Source: Trichosphaerium sp. ATCC 40318
Taxonomy: Eukaryota; Protista; Tubulinea
Direction of reading: 5' to 3'
DNA: 64,000 nt
NCBI GenBank assembly: GCA_038496445.1
Contig: JALMLS010000017.1
Span: forward strand, 1-64,000
The notes beneath the pieces are model-generated. The model searched no databases, was not told where the DNA came from, and worked only from the letters and a program-made list of their open reading frames with translations. Both the position numbers and the translations under genes were made by a program. How positions within the stretch are numbered: position 1 is the first letter of the stretch; each line of letters opens with the position of its first letter. This document shows, piece after piece, positions 6,221 to 13,396 of this stretch.

Positions 6221-9213
6221 TTAATTCTTCACTTGTGATTCATCTGTTTGTTCTTTTGTATTATCTTCAGTTTGAGTAGTGGCTTCTCCTTCGGCCTTTG
6301 GTTGATCATCTTTCGATGCTTCAGTTCCATTTTGAGCTTTCTTTGTATCTTCATCACCATTTTCTTGCTCAATAGGTTTTGGCACTGGTTTTTTTCTTTC
6401 AGGATGTTTTACTTTTGTTAGTTTAGGACTTTTTAAAGAAAATTTAAGTCCAGATCTATCATAAGTAGGTGGTGGACTCCACCACCCATAAACAGACCTA
6501 TGAAAGAGTTAATCATACATGAGGTAACTGTTTATGTATCTACTCGTACCCAATTAATGGAATAGTACGCATAACGCCATCAACGTATGTTTCGTACTCT
6601 TCTTGACCTTGAACCTGTTTTTGAGCTTTCTCTGCTTGTTTAATACTTTCTGATAGAATATCACCAATAGTTGCAAGCAGCTATACATCCAAGTAAGTAA
6701 AAAACCAAAGGCACTAAAATAGTTTCATACTGGACTCTTTTTCTCAAGTTCTACAGCTGTATCTCGGATTAAATTAACGTGGTACTCTACTTTTTCTTTT
6801 GTCAAAGGACTTGTATCCTAGTGCAAGAATGAAAGGTTAATAAAACTGATCAATGAAGAAAAAAAAATCCTCAAAATGCGTACAAGTGCTAATGCAATAA
6901 CAACATCTCCACGAAGATCTTTTGTTTGTGTATAGATTTGATGAGATTCAGACAAATGCTTGCATATCGATTCATTAAGAGTATTCACATCTGCTGCAAG
7001 TTTTTTAGGCATAGCCTCATCGCCTGTCATTACAAGTGAAGGTACATATCTAAAATCAAATACCACGTGAGATGATAAAATAGGTGAAAAAAAAAATCAC
7101 GGGAAGAAAAAAGACCAAAAAAAACAAGACGTACCGTACAGCACCAAGTCCAACAAAGTTAGGTAATTGTACGTTGTGTAAGTCCTCTTCATTTTCAACA
7201 AGTTTTTTGAAAACAGGTTGGAGTGTATAAGCGTTTTCAATTAATCCGACTTCTGTACTTAATTTTGAAATATAGCTATCAATTAGTGCTACGGTCATTT
7301 GTGGGATATTACAGCTTGCAAGTGGATGGTATCGAATGCATTGATGACCTTTGAATCTAACTAGTTCAAGATCCAAATCAATAGCTGATGTATGGTTCAT
7401 GTCATGTAGGATTTGTTCGTTTATGGCATCTAAAATGTTCTGAGGGTTCTTTGCAGTGACAGATGATCCTGTAGGTTGATAGCGGAATAACACTTGCATA
7501 GAAAAAGGAGGAGATTCAGTGATAATATGAGGGACATTTTGTAGCTTATTATAAAGATGTGAGACCTACAAAAAAGGAGTTAAGATAGCAATAATGTTGA
7601 AACGGCAAAATGAGGAAAAAAAATGCTTACCAATCGCTTTGATACTTGCATGCACTCACGGAAGTGGCTAAGTCCATTACGTTGTAATACTAACCACAAT
7701 GGTAAAGAAATCAACCCATGATCTATGAGTGTATCGACAGGCATGTTAGAGTTATCAATTGCGTTTTGAACAACTGGTTCTGGTGCTTGAACTTGTTCAT
7801 GTCTATGATTCAAATCTGATCTATAGAACACTGTTGTGATCTCATAAGACGTTGATTGAAAAAACAATGCCGAATTGAAAACAAAACTATTTGCACTTCG
7901 TATTGCAGTTAAAATATCAGGACAATCAGGGCTACTTAGTAAAATAGCGCCTTCGCTAAAAAAAGATTATTAAAATGTAAGAAAAAAAGAAGAAAAATAA
8001 TGTCATGTTTTTGACATTTGACACTTGACACTTACCCTTCAACATGAAGCCATAATTCTTGTCGTTTAGCTATATCACTGTATTTTTTTATGTCATCTGC
8101 GTCACCTCCAATTTCTGAACCGCTACGTGCTACTACAGCAAAAGGTGTATTGTCGCTTTCGTCTCTTAGCTTGGCGAGATCCTAGAAAAAAATTACATGA
8201 CAAAAAACTTCGCAAAACATCTTTTTTTTGATCAACTTCAAAAAAAAACCACTGTACCTCTGTAAGCTCTTCTGGGCTCGAAATAAAACGCAAAGAATTC
8301 AAAGGTAATCCTAAGTTTGTTATTAGAACGTATTTGAACAATGTTTAATTCCACAGCATACCAAGAAGATAAAGAGCGTGATTTAATTCCTGTCCTTTCC
8401 ACGCTAAAAAAAAACCAAGTTAACACATAAAATACACGAAATCTCTGAAACATACTAGTATACACTATAGGTAGCTTCCCCTTAAACGAACGGAATCCTA
8501 AAGTTCCATGGCTTGCGAATTTTGCACCTAACGCCTCGCGTAATGCCGACACACGAGCATCTTGCATAGTTCGTGTGTACATACCTAGGGTTGGGTACAA
8601 TTTAGCATTCACAAAAAAGAGAAGTACTGATAATGTTTTTTTGAAATATTTTCTTACCGCTCATTGCTGGTGGCAGGTTGAGGATAAAGTGGATCCAATT
8701 AATTGTTTGGCCATTTACAATCGAAGCGAACTGGTTTAACTGCGCGCTGCTCATATTTATGCGTAAATAAGCGACAAAAGCCTCTGACAGTGCAATGGCG
8801 TCAGATTGGTCATGGGTGCTACGCGAGGTTATTACAAGCGTGTTTTATAAACGTCAAACAAGATAGCGAACTAAAAAGAAAATGTACCCATCATTTAATA
8901 ACGAGTCTCCTGAGGCGATTTTTGTAATATTTACGAGTCTATCTAGCACTTCCTAGCGTGAGTGTCACGTCAATCAAACAAAACAACGGAAGTGGCTGAT
9001 TCTTTTGTGTGGGCATTACTTACCTTTATATCTACACTCTCTAACGCTGGTTGAGCTTTTAATTGTGATTTGCTGTAATGTTGTTAAAATCACTACCAGT
9101 CGCGATGACACATACCTAGCAACATTTCCCTCACTAAGAATGTGCTTTTTGAAGTAATCAAAATAATTATGTAAACCTCCTACGTCTTGTGTGGGTTCCT
9201 GCTGTTCTGCCAT
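6221..9213 (-). CDS. PDXDC1: PDXDC1-like pyridoxal-dependent decarboxylase domain protein
   Basis: Spliced motifs LWLHVEG, ANSFVFNSALFF, LPLWLVLQRNG, FVGLGAV.Y and DGVMRTIPLIGSVMGWWSPP match PDXDC1 hallmarks (WLHVEG; EGVLRQIPVVGSVLNWFSP). Confidence 0.75.
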
Positions 9214-9485
9214 GATGGTGTGAGGTGTTTGTCAATTTTCACAACAGGCGACGTGTCGCTAACCTCGCTTAGGGTTTGTACAAATAAGTCTTACACCAAA
9301 ACTGTTGATACCTCAAACTGGGAATGTCAGGCGGTATACCACGTAATCTTGCCCTGGGTGGCGCTGTGATTGTAGGTATAGGTAGCGGTACGTATGAACG
9401 TAACAACAAAACGTATTATGTAAACTTACAAAAATAATAGCTATTTACGCGTACATTCCAATGTTCGAACGTGTTAGGTGCGTAA

Positions 9486-9722
9486 ATGAGCGAAATTAAA
9501 ACTAAACAAAACAATAGAAACGAGAGAATAGCAGGTGGTTTTATTATACCGCCTGAACCCAAACAAGAGGATCCAAACGTGGCAGAATCAAACATACCAG
9601 AACAACAGGACTTGACACAATTAACAGCACCCCCGCCATCAACACCACTAAGCAGAGCACAGCGACGAGAACGAGACCTGGCACGATTAAGAGAACGCCG
9701 ACCACCAACAAGAACCTTTTAG
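9486..9722 (+). CDS. Small hypothetical disordered protein (78 aa)
   Basis: ATG-started intronless ORF with biased, protein-like composition. It fills the gap between PDXDC1 and the convergent MVP-like gene. No homology recognised. Confidence 0.4.
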   Translation: MSEIKTKQNNRNERIAGGFIIPPEPKQEDPNVAESNIPEQQDLTQLTAPPPSTPLSRAQRRERDLARLRERRPPTRTF

Positions 9723-9737
9723 TACGCAAAGTGCAAT

Positions 9738-11823
9738 TTATTTCCTTATTAATGGTAATACAAAGAAGAAGAACGATAACAGCATTGCTACGATTGCAAC
9801 AACATATGTGGCAAGGACATCTGGTTGAAACAAGTAAAAACCGGCCTAAAAATTAAGTGTCACGTGTAGGTATTTATAAACAAAAATATCCACGTACACC
9901 TTCCAGTTTTATGAAAGCTGGTATTTTTTTGACCACGTGCGCATCCAAAGGAGGCCAGTATCTGTACAAAGAATAAGTATAAAAAAATTTCACTGAGAAT
10001 GGTTTTTGTTTATATGTCAACATACTCAGTTGGTCCCACAACGAGCCATCCTAGACAGAAGTATAAGCAAGTTTTTGATTGTCACAAAGTCAAAAAATAC
10101 GTACTGGATCCACCTTTACGTGTGACAGCTCTTTTGCCTGATGTATCCTCAAAAGAAGCTAAAGCACGAACTTGTAGCGCTTCGTCCTCTTCACCATGTG
10201 TAAGCATAATATTTAAATAATTGCTTCATCGTACCGCCAAGCAAGTAAGCAGTTCGGATGCCAGCTGGAATACTCTCTCCAGGTTTCAAGAAGAAATTGG
10301 CTTCACCTTTAACAAGTCTGGAGTGGCCAAGTTGTATTTTTCCTGAGAATTAGTGAGTTTTTTTAATAGTTGGATAATATGTACCAGTTTCTGGATCTAC
10401 AGGATTTACGATAATACAGTATTGACGCTTTGTTAAAGATGTAATGGCGATTGTACGAACCAACTAACAGAAGTATTAAAAGGCTGTAAAGGAAAAAAAA
10501 CCAGAAGTGAGTTCTGCTTATGCAGATTTTCTTTGAAACTAACCTGCTCATTAACACCAACAATATGGGTTTCTTTACTTTCGTTTGTAATCAGCCATTC
10601 ATCACCAGGTTGATGCTCTTTAAAAATATCAGTAAGGTACTTATGCCAATCGACATCAAGCTTACCGTTTCCAAATTCATCAACAAATCGGTTGTTTGCT
10701 CTCATGTGTAGAGCAATCTTTTCTGTTAGAACTTGAGCTTTTACTGTCCTTACAACGACTTCATCGACAGCCGGCAGATAAGCACCGGTAGCTTTAAAGA
10801 GCCACTCTTCACCAGCCTTACGTTCGTTACCATCTCGGTCTACGAATTGTTTTCTAGCACGCAAATGGATGGCTACGAATTAGGTTATAAAACAACTTAC
10901 GTAATTCATCTCCCGTACCCTCATTAGGTTGAAGAACCACTGCTTTTATAGTGTGGACTATTCTCACTTCAATTTGTGGAATATACGTTCCAGGACCATA
11001 AAACAACCATTCCTTTCAAAATGTCAATTTTTCACAAAATGACTTTTTTTCAAGTTAAAAAGTTTACTTCTCCTGCTCTTCTTGGTACTGGTGTATCTCC
11101 CTCTGATTGTTGGGTAAATCTGTCATCGAAATCTCTGGTAGCTTGTAGCAGCAGGGCTGTATTTGGAGCCACAACCTTTAACGACTCAATGCGTCCAGCA
11201 ATTTTTTCACCTGAATAAAGCCTTAATACCGTTACAACGTACTAGTAATACATACCTGGGTATAGAGGGAAAGGTGATTGCTCTAAACGCACTTCTTTAT
11301 CACCGTGCCTTAAAGTAGCCTATTTCTTGTTATAAATGGCTCTGGACGCTAAATTTTTGTACCTGGCCGTCTTTATCAACGACTACGTCGCCTTTTTCGT
11401 CTTTCACAACAGGGTCGTTGACAATAACCTAAAAAATGTCACTGAATTGCACACTTTTGCTCTCAACGTTACGTAATGGCGAGGTGGCACAACTATTTCT
11501 TTAACAGGACCATAAACGAGTTTTTCTTCCTCTTTGCATCTAAGAAGTTAATATAAGCGTCTGAAACAATAGTTTGTACACTCAAACCGTTCGAGAAAAA
11601 TATAATTTTACTTGAAAATGAAAACCGGATTGTTTTTCATACCTGAAGGTCTTTGGACCTCTCACTACGCGCACCTATACCTGTTAACACTTGTCTTAAA
11701 AAAAACCGCGGGTGTACGTACTGTATTTGTGTTTCTGTCCAAAACATGGGCGAAATGGTATGGAGGTATCTTGTATAACAAGTTTTGAGGGTAAATGTAC
11801 GAATCTTGGTAGCTCTTGGACAT
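9738..11823 (-). CDS. MVP-like: Truncated major vault protein paralog (repeats R1-R7) with C-terminal transmembrane tail anchor
   Basis: Colinear with the MVP N-terminus: [119 protein letters not shown]. The last exon encodes [35 protein letters not shown] (TAA at 9738-9740). Confidence 0.88.
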
Positions 11824-11937
11824 GTTACTAACTTACAGTATTTTTGGAGTAGATTTGACGTTGCAACTTATCAAGTTTTTTAAGCCATACAAGCATGCAA
11901 TTTTTTAGAAAGCTATTTTATTTATTTCTTTGCTACT

Positions 11938-13396
11938 TTACACGTCATCCAAGCTATCAAGTACATCATCTACATAGAGTCAAAACGAATAAATTATTTC
12001 AATGAAGCATTTTGACACGTTGACAGTATGTTTACATATTTGCTGTCGTAAGAAAGAACATAATGTACGTTATTGAAGTTAAACAAGTTTTGAACCAAGG
12101 ATACCTCTTGGCCAGGATGCCAAGCTGCAAAAAAATTATGTTTAAATTACGTACCATCTTCCCACGTGAAGTCGTCAACAATCATGTCATTATCTTCCGT
12201 TAGATCTTGCTCTGTCATACCTAATTGATCAAGCTCATCTTTGAAATCCTGTTTCCAATTATCTACCTCCTTGTCAACATCAAAATCATCACCAATCAAG
12301 TCAGATGCGAAGGCCATATTATGTTCTTCTGATGTCTCCTGTTCTTTAGGTGATTCCTTGGGTTCTTGAGTTTCCACTGGCTTATTGGAAACCTCATCTA
12401 TTAATCAAGTTATACGAAGAGTACACCGTAACCACGTACCAGCGCTCTGTATTTCTTGTTTTTTCAAGTCTGTTTCTTCATTCACTTCCTTCGACTCTGG
12501 TTTTGCTGCGACATTGTCATCTACCTCTCCCTCTGGTTTTTTTGGTTCGTCTTGTCCTTGATCAATGAGGCCATACGCTCTCTTTAGTAAATGGATGCGA
12601 TAAAAATAATTCCTCCAAAAATCATCTTCATTTATAACACGTGGAACTACCTCAAACCTTATCTTTGCCAATTGTTTATCTTGCTTTAAAGACTCTATAG
12701 CACAAGGTAACAGAGCTTCCATATCAAATGAAAACGTATTATCTTCGTCTATGGCTTCAGATGGGCAGTTTGTTAAATTCCGCTTACTCTGAAAAAAATA
12801 AGTAAAGTTAAGAATTCAAGTTTTGGCAAGTGTCGGTTTGTACATGTGGGATTTGTAGTATATTAGCCTTTAACTGCTGCGCTATTTTTTCGTCGTGACA
12901 TTTAAACGATTCCCAAGCTGGTCGAGATACACTTGCTGCCAAAGCCCCTAGTATTGTTAACACTTATTACCACTACCCACAACGAAGACTCACTCTTTTT
13001 AGATGCCTCCTCTTCTTGTTTGCGGGTTTCATTTTCAATAATAGACTTCTCTCGTTCGATCCTAGCTTTGATAGTAGTTGTAACTTCAGAATTGGCTAAT
13101 TTATCAGTTGTGACAGCTATGGTGCGCGAAACCGTGGTGCTTGCAGTTCTTGCCACATTCCCAACGGCATTTTTGGCTCTGGAATAAAATGATGCTAAAG
13201 AGCGTAAGTAACAGCTACAAAAGCGACAAGGGCTAATTGTTACGGTACAGAAAAATCCTGAAGTCTCTGGGGGTTGTGGGTCTACTGGCTGCCCATCTAT
13301 ACATAAAATCAGTTAAATAATAAATACTCGACGATCTAAACGCTACGAACCTGCGTTTTCAAAGGCATAACCACTAATAACTTTATTGGTAGTCAT
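11938..13396 (-). CDS. BSD domain protein (SYAP1-like)
   Basis: DKQLAKIRFEVVPRVINEDDFWRNYFYRIHLLK is the BSD signature; the C-terminus is acidic. Confidence 0.85.

What the first reader, a model, noticed from the sequence alone, without database searches (positions are those of the whole stretch)
9738..11823. Tail-anchored major vault protein paralog: candidate membrane dock for vaults
Seen: the spliced protein is colinear with MVP repeats R1-R7 up to [27 protein letters not shown] (compare canonical YVP..VEVVE.R.AIPLDENEGIYV). It then ends in a ~21-residue hydrophobic helix plus RK* ([26 protein letters not shown]), encoded by its own cleanly spliced last exon. No sequence for R8-R9, shoulder or cap helix lies before the next gene. 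Known: MVP is soluble, and the cap helix drives vault assembly while R1-R2 form the waist contacts. Inference: a hydrophobic helix followed by a few basic residues and a stop is typical tail-anchor topology, so the vault repeats would be displayed on the cytosolic face of ER, nuclear envelope or mitochondria. There they could co-polymerise with or tether true vaults, or form a membrane-bound ring. The intact frame over more than a dozen introns argues against a decayed copy. I cannot exclude that such paralogs are already catalogued in other protists.
Basis: partly seen in the sequence, partly recalled or inferred. Interest (0 to 1): 0.85.

Follow-up and report, generated by a model that had tools for sequence, protein, structure and literature searches.

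The report
Membrane-anchored short major vault protein
This is a real, expressed gene for a shortened major vault protein that keeps the seven N-terminal vault repeats and ends in a membrane anchor; it belongs to a conserved, apparently undescribed family found across amoebae, and could explain how vault particles attach to the endoplasmic reticulum.

Summary
Observation confirmed. A minus-strand gene (11823-9738; 15 exons, 14 GT-AG introns, 438 aa) encodes MVP repeats R1-R7 and the first strand of R8. It then ends in a 24-residue hydrophobic helix followed by RK and a stop. Spliced RNA contigs from four runs (three samples) support all 14 introns, including the last. One contig runs unspliced to the stop codon. 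No R8-R9, shoulder or cap sequence exists anywhere in the 64 kb.

It is not a decayed copy. I found 77 non-redundant proteins with the same architecture. They include proteins from Acanthamoeba, Balamuthia, Arcella, Pyxidicula, Flabellula, Rhizamoeba, Clydonella, Paradermamoeba, Luapelamoeba and four dictyostelids. A Pelomyxa protein also falls in the clade, but its C-terminal end looks mis-modelled. In a tree, 58 of them form one clade apart from full-length MVPs (support 100/100). Of 35 members with a tail of 6 or more residues after the helix, 26 end in -[DE]L, an ER-retrieval-like signal. Only 4 of 364 other proteins do. The window's protein lacks this ending.

I found no paper describing this family. 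A 2026 cryo-ET study reports Dictyostelium vaults sitting on ER and nuclear-envelope membranes with no known anchor. The match is suggestive but untested, and D. discoideum may lack this paralog. Membrane topology is well supported by inference. ER location is moderately supported. Vault docking remains a hypothesis.

The parts
9738..11823 (-). Complete coding region of the tail-anchored MVP paralog (15 exons, 438 aa, stop TAA 9740-9738)
   Evidence: Model built. All splice joints are seen in RNA contigs of four runs.
11824..11845 (-). Short 5' UTR. The RNA contigs start at 11832-11845.
   Evidence: Contig ends and adaptor loose ends.
11722..11823 (-). Exon 1: a roughly 10-residue N-terminal extension plus the start of repeat R1 ([11 protein letters not shown] motif)
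10666..10872 (-). Exon 8, the longest exon (R4-R5); used as the search query
   Evidence: Pfam Vault E 1e-19. 504 library hits.
10026..10050 (-). Exon 13 (25 nt), end of R7 (RWLVVGPTE)
   Evidence: Joints 9961|10026 and 10049|10104 are present in all four runs.
9898..9961 (-). Exon 14: [21 protein letters not shown], the last strand of R7 and the linker
9738..9845 (-). Exon 15: a remnant of the first R8 strand (AGFYLFQPD), the transmembrane helix, RK and the stop
   Evidence: Joint 9844|9897 is present in all four runs. The X4 contig is contiguous from 9844 to 9738.
9747..9818 (-). Codons of the predicted transmembrane helix (residues 413-436)
   Evidence: KD19 maximum 2.91. The equivalent segment of relative P0187 is modelled as helix 410-432.
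9737..9742 (-). AATAAA hexamer overlapping the stop codon, a likely poly(A) signal implying a very short 3' UTR
   Evidence: Read directly from the sequence. The X4 contig ends at 9738. Its function is inferred.
9722..9765 (+). Intron of a plus-strand transcript that runs antisense through the last exon (GTACGC..ACAAAG). It is not part of the MVP-like mRNA.
   Evidence: The joint 9721|9766 was deduced from record offsets of the X1 and X3 contigs. The intron ends were read.

Best explanation
The gene encodes a bona fide tail-anchored membrane protein. About 410 residues fold as MVP repeats R1-R7 and face the cytosol. A single helix at the extreme C-terminus (residues 413-436, then RK) is inserted post-translationally into a membrane, most likely the ER or nuclear envelope.

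The protein belongs to an old paralog family, called TA-MVP here, found throughout Amoebozoa. The family lost R8-R9, the shoulder (SPFH) domain and the cap helix, and gained the anchor.

The repeats stay 39-57% identical to mammalian MVP. I therefore think the protein presents a vault-wall surface at the membrane. It would either dock the open rim (R1 waist) of a canonical half-vault, or pack side by side into a membrane-fixed partial barrel.

Shown here: the gene, its splicing and expression, the architecture, its conservation, and that it forms one clade.
Inferred: membrane insertion (about 0.85), ER location (about 0.6 for the family, less for this member), and vault docking (about 0.3).
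For: - Gene model with intact frame and 14 canonical introns, each confirmed by spliced contigs in four runs from three samples.
- Vault repeats by Pfam.
- Nearest relative P0187 (61% identical) aligns to MVP residues 5-377. It folds with pLDDT 94 into beta repeats plus a terminal helix 410-432. It superposes on murine MVP R1-R7 (3GNG, TM 0.86) and on human vault chains at 2.2 A rmsd.
- 77 non-redundant proteins share the junction motif followed by a 17-32 residue hydrophobic helix and a 0-23 residue tail. 26 of 35 with tails of 6 or more residues end in [DE]L, against 4 of 364 other proteins.
- Tail-anchored (58 rows) and full-length (35 rows) proteins split on one branch with support 100/100.
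- Named members span Tubulinea, Discosea and Evosea.
- In the Acanthamoeba and Heterostelium genomes the gene stands alone, with no R8-to-cap sequence within 6 kb. Nothing of that kind occurs in this window either.
- No signal peptide or second hydrophobic segment.
- PMC13100048 reports vaults standing upright on ER and nuclear-envelope membranes, with about 50 nm exposed including the equator, the lower cap unresolved and no membrane motif known.
Against: - No experiment shows membrane insertion, location or MVP binding.
- This member ends in RK and lacks the -[DE]L ending, as does its whole Tubulinea subclade. Its target membrane is therefore less certain.
- The cap helix that drives MVP self-assembly is missing. 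This role of the cap helix is recalled from the vault literature and was not checked here.
- R1 waist residues are only partly kept. Against the mouse interface listed in PMC2752026, D39/R42 become E/K and A6/I7 become L/L, but E4, E5, I36 and R37 become Q, N, R and C. There is also a roughly 10-residue N-terminal extension.
- A search with the Heterostelium protein found orthologs in four dictyostelids but none from D. discoideum. The cryo-ET observation may therefore not involve this family.
- Contigs carry no strand information, and a plus-strand transcript overlaps the last exon.
Confidence: 0.55

Rival explanations
1. The protein is a tail-anchored scaffold that works without vault shells. 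The R1-R7 array would recruit ligands of MVP repeats (PARP4-like enzymes, signalling or ubiquitin-pathway proteins) to the ER, or would form its own assembly unrelated to canonical vaults.
For: The assembly domains (shoulder, cap helix) are absent. One dictyostelid member carries an N-terminal CUE ubiquitin-binding domain. First-stage notes report PARP-like genes in this genome (unchecked). Human vault structures with PARP4 bound to the cage exist (9bw6).
Against: High conservation along all seven repeats, not just one binding site, suits lattice packing better than a single ligand site. No ligand is known for amoebozoan MVP repeats.
Confidence: 0.25
2. The protein is tail-anchored but sent to another membrane (mitochondrial outer membrane, peroxisome or Golgi) and not to the ER.
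For: This member and its subclade have no luminal tail and no -[DE]L. The helix is followed by two basic residues. From general knowledge of tail-anchor targeting, this pattern can favour mitochondria.
Against: The helix is long (24 residues) and very hydrophobic (KD 2.9), which from general knowledge favours the ER route. Sister subfamilies carry ER-retrieval-like ends.
Confidence: 0.13
3. The hydrophobic C-terminus is not a membrane span. It could be, for example, a degron or an aggregation-prone read-through of a truncated copy that happens to be expressed.
For: The tail sequence itself is poorly conserved; only its hydrophobicity and position are kept. The last exon overlaps an antisense transcript.
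Against: The position, length (17-32 residues) and hydrophobicity of the helix are kept in 77 proteins across Amoebozoa. A compartment-specific signal follows it in many of them. This is the usual conservation pattern of transmembrane anchors.
Confidence: 0.05
4. The gene is a decaying truncated duplicate or an assembly or annotation artefact.
For: It lacks half of a normal MVP.
Against: The frame is intact over 14 introns. The RNA contigs show no differences from the genome across the gene in any of the four runs. The clade of orthologs is monophyletic. The same stand-alone gene occurs in two other genome assemblies.
Confidence: 0.02

Closest known systems
Canonical major vault protein (rat/human MVP; PDB 4V60, 9bw5)
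   Same: Repeats R1-R7 are colinear and 39-57% identical per repeat. The predicted fold of the nearest relative superposes on vault chains at 2.2 A rmsd.
   Different: There is no R8 (beyond its first strand), R9, shoulder/SPFH domain, cap helix or cap ring. A C-terminal transmembrane helix takes their place. The family forms a separate clade.
Recombinant murine MVP R1-R7 fragment (residues 1-383; PDB 3GF5/3GNF/3GNG; PMC2752026)
   Same: It covers almost exactly the same span as the cytosolic part of this protein. It is the best structural match (TM 0.86).
   Different: The fragment is a laboratory construct. Here nature has produced the same cut and joined it to a membrane anchor.
Membrane-associated vaults seen by cryo-ET in Dictyostelium discoideum (Geissler et al. 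2026, PMC13100048)
   Same: The location is the cytosolic face of the ER or nuclear envelope. The attachment lies at a fixed barrel height below the equator. The cap on the membrane side is missing from the density, and no anchor is known. A ring of R1-R7 plus helices would look like this.
   Different: The authors place the contact at the shoulder of an intact MVP. No short paralog is mentioned. I found no D. discoideum ortholog, so the link is untested.
Membrane-anchored SPFH cages (stomatin, prohibitin, erlin, flotillin, HflK/C)
   Same: They are relatives of the MVP shoulder domain that form rings on membranes through terminal helices or lipid anchors (as reviewed in PMC13100048).
   Different: Those proteins anchor through the N-terminal side and use the SPFH and helical domains. 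This protein has lost exactly those domains and anchors through its C-terminus.
Tail-anchored ER proteins with a luminal HDEL-type end (for example yeast Sec20p; from my own knowledge, not checked here)
   Same: A single C-terminal helix is followed in many family members by a short tail ending in -[DE]L.
   Different: The cytosolic domains are unrelated. The window's own protein has no such ending.

Membership tests
Major vault protein (vault shell subunit) | N-terminal MVP repeat domains (Pfam Vault, Vault_2) | tested here: met
   Exons hit PF01505 (E 1e-19) and PF17794. The relative P0187 aligns to MVP residues 5-377 and matches the R1-R7 structures.
Major vault protein (vault shell subunit) | Repeats R8-R9 (Pfam Vault_3, Vault_4) | tested here: not met
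   No tblastn match beyond about MVP residue 390 in the window. Family members lack PF17795 and PF17796.
Major vault protein (vault shell subunit) | Shoulder (SPFH-like) domain, PF11978 | tested here: not met
   The protein ends 27 residues after the junction.
Major vault protein (vault shell subunit) | Cap-helix coiled coil and cap ring | tested here: not met
Major vault protein (vault shell subunit) | Assembly into 39-fold half shells | not testable with these tools
   No multimer modelling or experiment is available here.
Tail-anchored membrane proteins | A single hydrophobic helix within about 30-40 residues of the C-terminus | tested here: met
   The helix spans residues 413-436 of 438. 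KD19 is 2.91.
Tail-anchored membrane proteins | No N-terminal signal peptide and no other transmembrane segment | tested here: met
   Maximum KD19 elsewhere is 1.01, and 0.17 at the N-terminus. This rests on a hydropathy scan only; no dedicated predictor was available.
Tail-anchored membrane proteins | Post-translational insertion with the N-terminal domain in the cytosol | not testable with these tools
   Inferred from the position of the helix.
ER residents with a K/HDEL-type retrieval signal | C-terminal -[KH]DEL or a close variant on the luminal side | tested here: not met
   The window protein ends ...LIRK. Among relatives, 26 of 35 with tails of 6 or more residues end in [DE]L.
TA-MVP clade (defined in this report) | Branches inside the clade of short, anchored MVPs | tested here: met
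   Careful tree: tail-anchored versus full-length split at 100/100. The window groups with the Flabellula, Pyxidicula and Arcella paralogs at 100/99.
TA-MVP clade (defined in this report) | Junction motif E-x-(L/G)-x-(L/F)-Y-x-F-x-P directly followed by the helix | tested here: met
   The window has [12 protein letters not shown] followed by the helix. The family consensus is shown.

The most novel reading that the evidence does not exclude
TA-MVP could be the missing membrane anchor of vaults. A ring of these proteins, held in the ER or nuclear-envelope bilayer by up to 39 C-terminal helices, would pair through R1 with a normal half-vault. The result would be the upright, cap-less, membrane-bound particles seen by cryo-ET. 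This would create an enclosed cytosolic chamber over a defined membrane patch. Vaults would then be, at least in amoebae, partly a membrane organelle.
Probability: 0.2. Interest if true: 0.92.

Novelty: new variant of a known kind. Interest (0 to 1): 0.78.

Why it matters
Vaults are among the largest and most conserved eukaryotic particles, and their function is still unknown. In 2026 they were first seen bound to ER and nuclear-envelope membranes, with no membrane-binding element identified (PMC13100048).

A conserved, expressed MVP paralog that keeps exactly the wall-forming and rim-forming repeats, and swaps the assembly half for a membrane anchor, gives a concrete candidate that can be studied genetically. 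The candidate can be tagged, knocked out and imaged in tractable amoebae such as Acanthamoeba and some dictyostelids.

Even if it does not dock vaults, it shows that MVP repeats were re-used as a membrane-displayed module. It also supplies a natural counterpart of the R1-R7 laboratory fragment.

It matters for annotation as well. These proteins are currently labelled 'major vault protein' and would be counted as evidence for extra vault subunits.

Tried and rejected
1. Pseudogene or misassembly was rejected on RNA support, conservation and the same locus type in two other genomes.

2. Onward splicing to shoulder or cap exons was rejected. No such sequence exists in 64 kb. Two contigs (X1, X3) do continue beyond exon 15, but through a joint (9721|9766) whose skipped stretch is GT..AG on the plus strand. 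This belongs to a convergent antisense transcript merged by the assembler, not to the MVP-like mRNA. I could not see the 18 joints that the reads tool left unlisted.

3. I considered a short isoform of a full-length gene. A 477-aa Clastostelium sequence in the same cluster as an 883-aa MVP turned out to be the C-terminal half of the canonical protein, not an anchored form.

4. The one 'full-length' row inside the anchored clade in the first tree (P0028, 696 aa) looks like a fused or read-through model. I left it out of the second tree.

5. I tried to retrieve the window's own protein as a database entry. The spliced sequence has no reference and I did not type it. Exon 8 served as the query, and relatives served for folding. 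The model is therefore of P0187 (61% identical), not of this protein.

6. I tried to learn whether D. discoideum Q54T29 (DDB_G0282033) is of the anchored type. [quoted passage not shown] Its length is not given there, and no paper in the library mentions it.

7. A profile search meant to list more named anchored members was swamped by full-length MVPs.

8. I found no coherent ORF for the plus-strand antisense transcript.

Full report
**The gene.** The interval holds a minus-strand gene. I rebuilt it by hand from the three-frame translation. It has 15 exons between 11823 and 9738 and 14 introns of 42-103 nt, all GT..AG. Most donors read GTA(C/T)G. The frame is intact and gives 438 aa.

Single exons, given by reference, hit Pfam Vault (exon 8, E 1e-19) and Vault_2. 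The protein ends with a 24-residue uncharged stretch (residues 413-436), then RK and TAA. The 19-residue hydropathy maximum there is 2.91. Nowhere else does it exceed 1.01, and the N-terminus is hydrophilic. There is thus one hydrophobic helix, two residues from the C-terminus, and no signal peptide. That is the definition of a tail anchor.

**Expression and splicing.** Four public runs hold the sequence. Laid on 6500-12400, their contigs carry every one of the 14 joints with the skipped ends CT..AC on the plus strand, that is GT..AG for this gene. This includes 9844|9897 before the last exon, in all four runs. No run shows a base difference inside the gene. The X4 contig runs contiguously from 9844 to 9738, the last base of the stop codon. 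An AATAAA hexamer overlaps the stop (9742-9737), which suggests a very short 3' UTR.

The X1 and X3 contigs instead pass from 9766 to 9721. From the record offsets this joint is exact. The skipped 44 nt read GTACGC..ACAAAG on the plus strand, so they are an intron of a plus-strand transcript that overlaps the last exon in antisense. Contigs have no direction, so the assembler has merged two convergent RNAs. This is not onward splicing of the MVP-like mRNA. I could not inspect 18 joints that the tool did not list.

**Absence of the missing half.** tblastn with four full-length MVPs (three amoebozoan, one animal) finds the R1-R7 exons and nothing credible for residues beyond about 390 in the whole 64 kb. 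The downstream neighbour (about 7950-9060) is an unrelated minus-strand multi-exon gene.

**It is a family, not an accident.** A whole-library HMMER search with exon 8 gave 504 hits. Many of the best are 380-480 aa long. Locally I found 77 non-redundant proteins, counting this one. In each, the MVP alignment stops at a conserved motif (consensus E-x-L-x-L/F-Y-x-F-x-P; here [12 protein letters not shown]). A hydrophobic helix of 17-32 residues follows directly, with only 0-23 residues after it. Canonical MVPs read AIPLDENEGIYVRD-KTGKVR at the same place and continue for more than 400 residues.

Named members come from these taxa:
- Pyxidicula operculata and Flabellula baltica (two paralogs each);
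- Rhizamoeba saxonica, Arcella intermedia, Clydonella, Paradermamoeba levis and Luapelamoeba hula;
- Acanthamoeba castellanii (L8GWT3), Balamuthia mandrillaris and Pelomyxa schiedti (C-terminal end probably mis-modelled);
- the dictyostelids Heterostelium album, Acytostelium subglobosum, Synstelium polycarpum and Tieghemostelium lacteum.

This covers Tubulinea, Discosea and Evosea.

**Phylogeny.** The tree uses 93 sequences over the shared N-terminal region (IQ-TREE, LG+C20 PMSF). The 58 anchored proteins and the 35 full-length ones fall on opposite sides of a single branch, with ultrafast bootstrap 100 and SH-aLRT 100 (quick versions). Amoebozoan full-length MVPs (Echinamoeba, Echinostelium, Clastostelium, Ceratiomyxa) sit with the other full-length proteins.

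The window's protein groups (100/99) with one of the two paralogs of Flabellula and Pyxidicula and with Arcella. Its nearest relatives are P0187/P0263 (61% identity, metatranscriptome) and P0180. This suggests a tubulinean amoeba as the source. The tree is unrooted, so it shows one origin of the architecture but not when the duplication happened relative to other eukaryotes.

**Independent genomes.** In the A. castellanii and H. album assemblies the gene stands alone between unrelated genes. No R8-to-cap sequence lies within 6 kb on either side. A. castellanii also has a full-length MVP (L8GQU5, cited in PMC3762200), so the two types co-exist. First-stage notes on this genome mention another MVP gene with a SAP domain, a PARP4-like gene and a vault-RNA-like candidate. 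I did not check them.

**Structure.** I could not submit the spliced protein by reference. I therefore folded the nearest relative, P0187, with an alignment of 37 family members plus five exon translations of this window. Mean pLDDT is 94. The model is all-beta up to residue 407, followed by one helix at 410-432.

Foldseek places it on murine MVP R1-R7 (3GNG/3GF5, TM 0.86 by target) and on chains of human, rat and rabbit vaults at about 2.2 A rmsd over about 388 columns with 50% identity. By sequence, P0187 residues 9-394 match MVP 5-377. The crystallised R1-R7 construct is residues 1-383 (PMC2752026).

Per repeat, the window protein is 39-57% identical to a bat MVP in R1-R7 and 14% after the junction (repeat limits recalled from the rat structure paper).

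**Where it goes.** Among the 35 family members with 6 or more residues after the helix, 26 end in -[DE]L (KDEL, KKEL, QQEL, KSDL and others). Only 4 of the 364 other proteins in the set do. For a tail-anchored protein that end is luminal, and a K/HDEL-like end is the classical ER retrieval signal (general knowledge). This points to the ER, which is continuous with the nuclear envelope, for much of the family.

The window's protein and its subclade end at or just after the helix (here RK), so for them the target is inferred only by kinship and by the long, very hydrophobic helix.

**What it may do.** The literature search found no description of an anchored MVP. It did find Geissler et al. 2026 (PMC13100048). 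In D. discoideum tomograms, 14 of 999 vaults stand upright on the cytosolic face of the ER or nuclear envelope. About 50 nm of the roughly 75 nm particle is visible, including the equator. The membrane-side cap is not resolved and the bilayer is continuous and locally thinner. The authors state that no membrane-associating motif is known for the vault.

A ring of R1-R7 units anchored by C-terminal helices and paired through R1 with a normal half-vault would give that picture. This is inference only. The authors place the contact at the shoulder, and their resolution (14 particles) cannot separate R7/R8 from the shoulder.

Two points count against the link.
- My search with the Heterostelium protein returned four dictyostelid orthologs but none from D. 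discoideum.
- The R1 interface residues listed in PMC2752026 are only partly conserved here (D39/R42 to E/K, A6/I7 to L/L, but E4, E5, I36, R37 to Q, N, R, C), behind a 10-residue N-terminal extension.

One open lead remains. A third D. discoideum 'major vault protein', Q54T29 (DDB_G0282033), is significantly enriched in their MVPA proximity labelling (log2 fold change 1.09, q 4.7e-7). I could not find its length.

**Verdict.** The gene is a member of a conserved family across Amoebozoa that databases call 'major vault protein' and that, as far as I could search, no paper has recognised as a membrane-anchored class. I file it as a new variant of a known kind. Its function as a vault dock is a testable hypothesis, not a result.

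Noticed in passing
window 9515-9721 and 9766 onward (+ strand), intron 9722-9765: A spliced plus-strand transcript runs antisense through the transmembrane-helix exon of the MVP-like gene. It is seen as a 9721|9766 joint in contigs of two independent samples (X1, X3). I found no convincing ORF for it. A 78-codon ORF (9486-9719) stops at the splice site.
   Followed up: partly
window 11938-12400 (- strand): The upstream gene on the same strand has a 185-nt intron (11970-12154) and stops at 11940-11938. That is only about 93 nt before the start of the MVP-like transcript, so gene spacing here is very tight.
   Followed up: no
window ~7950-9060 (- strand): The downstream neighbour is an expressed multi-exon minus-strand gene (CT..AC joints at 7954|8036, 8581|8655 and others). 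It was not identified.
   Followed up: no
L001:3001-4263 and L002:3001-4263 (ENA metagenome scaffolds): An intron-less 420-aa anchored MVP (P0394) falls inside the TA-MVP clade. It sits on gene-dense, 35% GC scaffolds next to ankyrin-repeat and kinase ORFs. It may belong to a giant virus or an amoeba-associated microbe that captured the gene.
   Followed up: partly
protein P0368 (Synstelium polycarpum), residues 27-67: This dictyostelid TA-MVP carries an N-terminal CUE (ubiquitin-binding) domain (25 bits, cut-off 21.1). This hints at a link to ubiquitin-dependent ER quality control. It comes from a single gene model that could be a fusion.
   Followed up: partly
L004:6001-8295 (Acanthamoeba castellanii KB007974.1): In A. 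castellanii too, the 3' end of the TA-MVP gene overlaps a convergent gene (DNA_pol_A_exo1 family, 7953-10390 on the other strand). This resembles the antisense overlap in this window and may be coincidence.
   Followed up: no
supplement of PMC13100048 (row Q54T29): An uncharacterised third D. discoideum 'major vault protein' (DDB_G0282033) is enriched in MVPA-TurboID labelling but is not discussed in the paper.
   Followed up: partly
proteins P0163, P0344, P0338 and others: Full-length MVP homologs of cyanobacteria and other bacteria ('colicin uptake protein') cluster close to amoebozoan full-length MVPs in the tree. Daly et al. 2013 already noted this.
   Followed up: no
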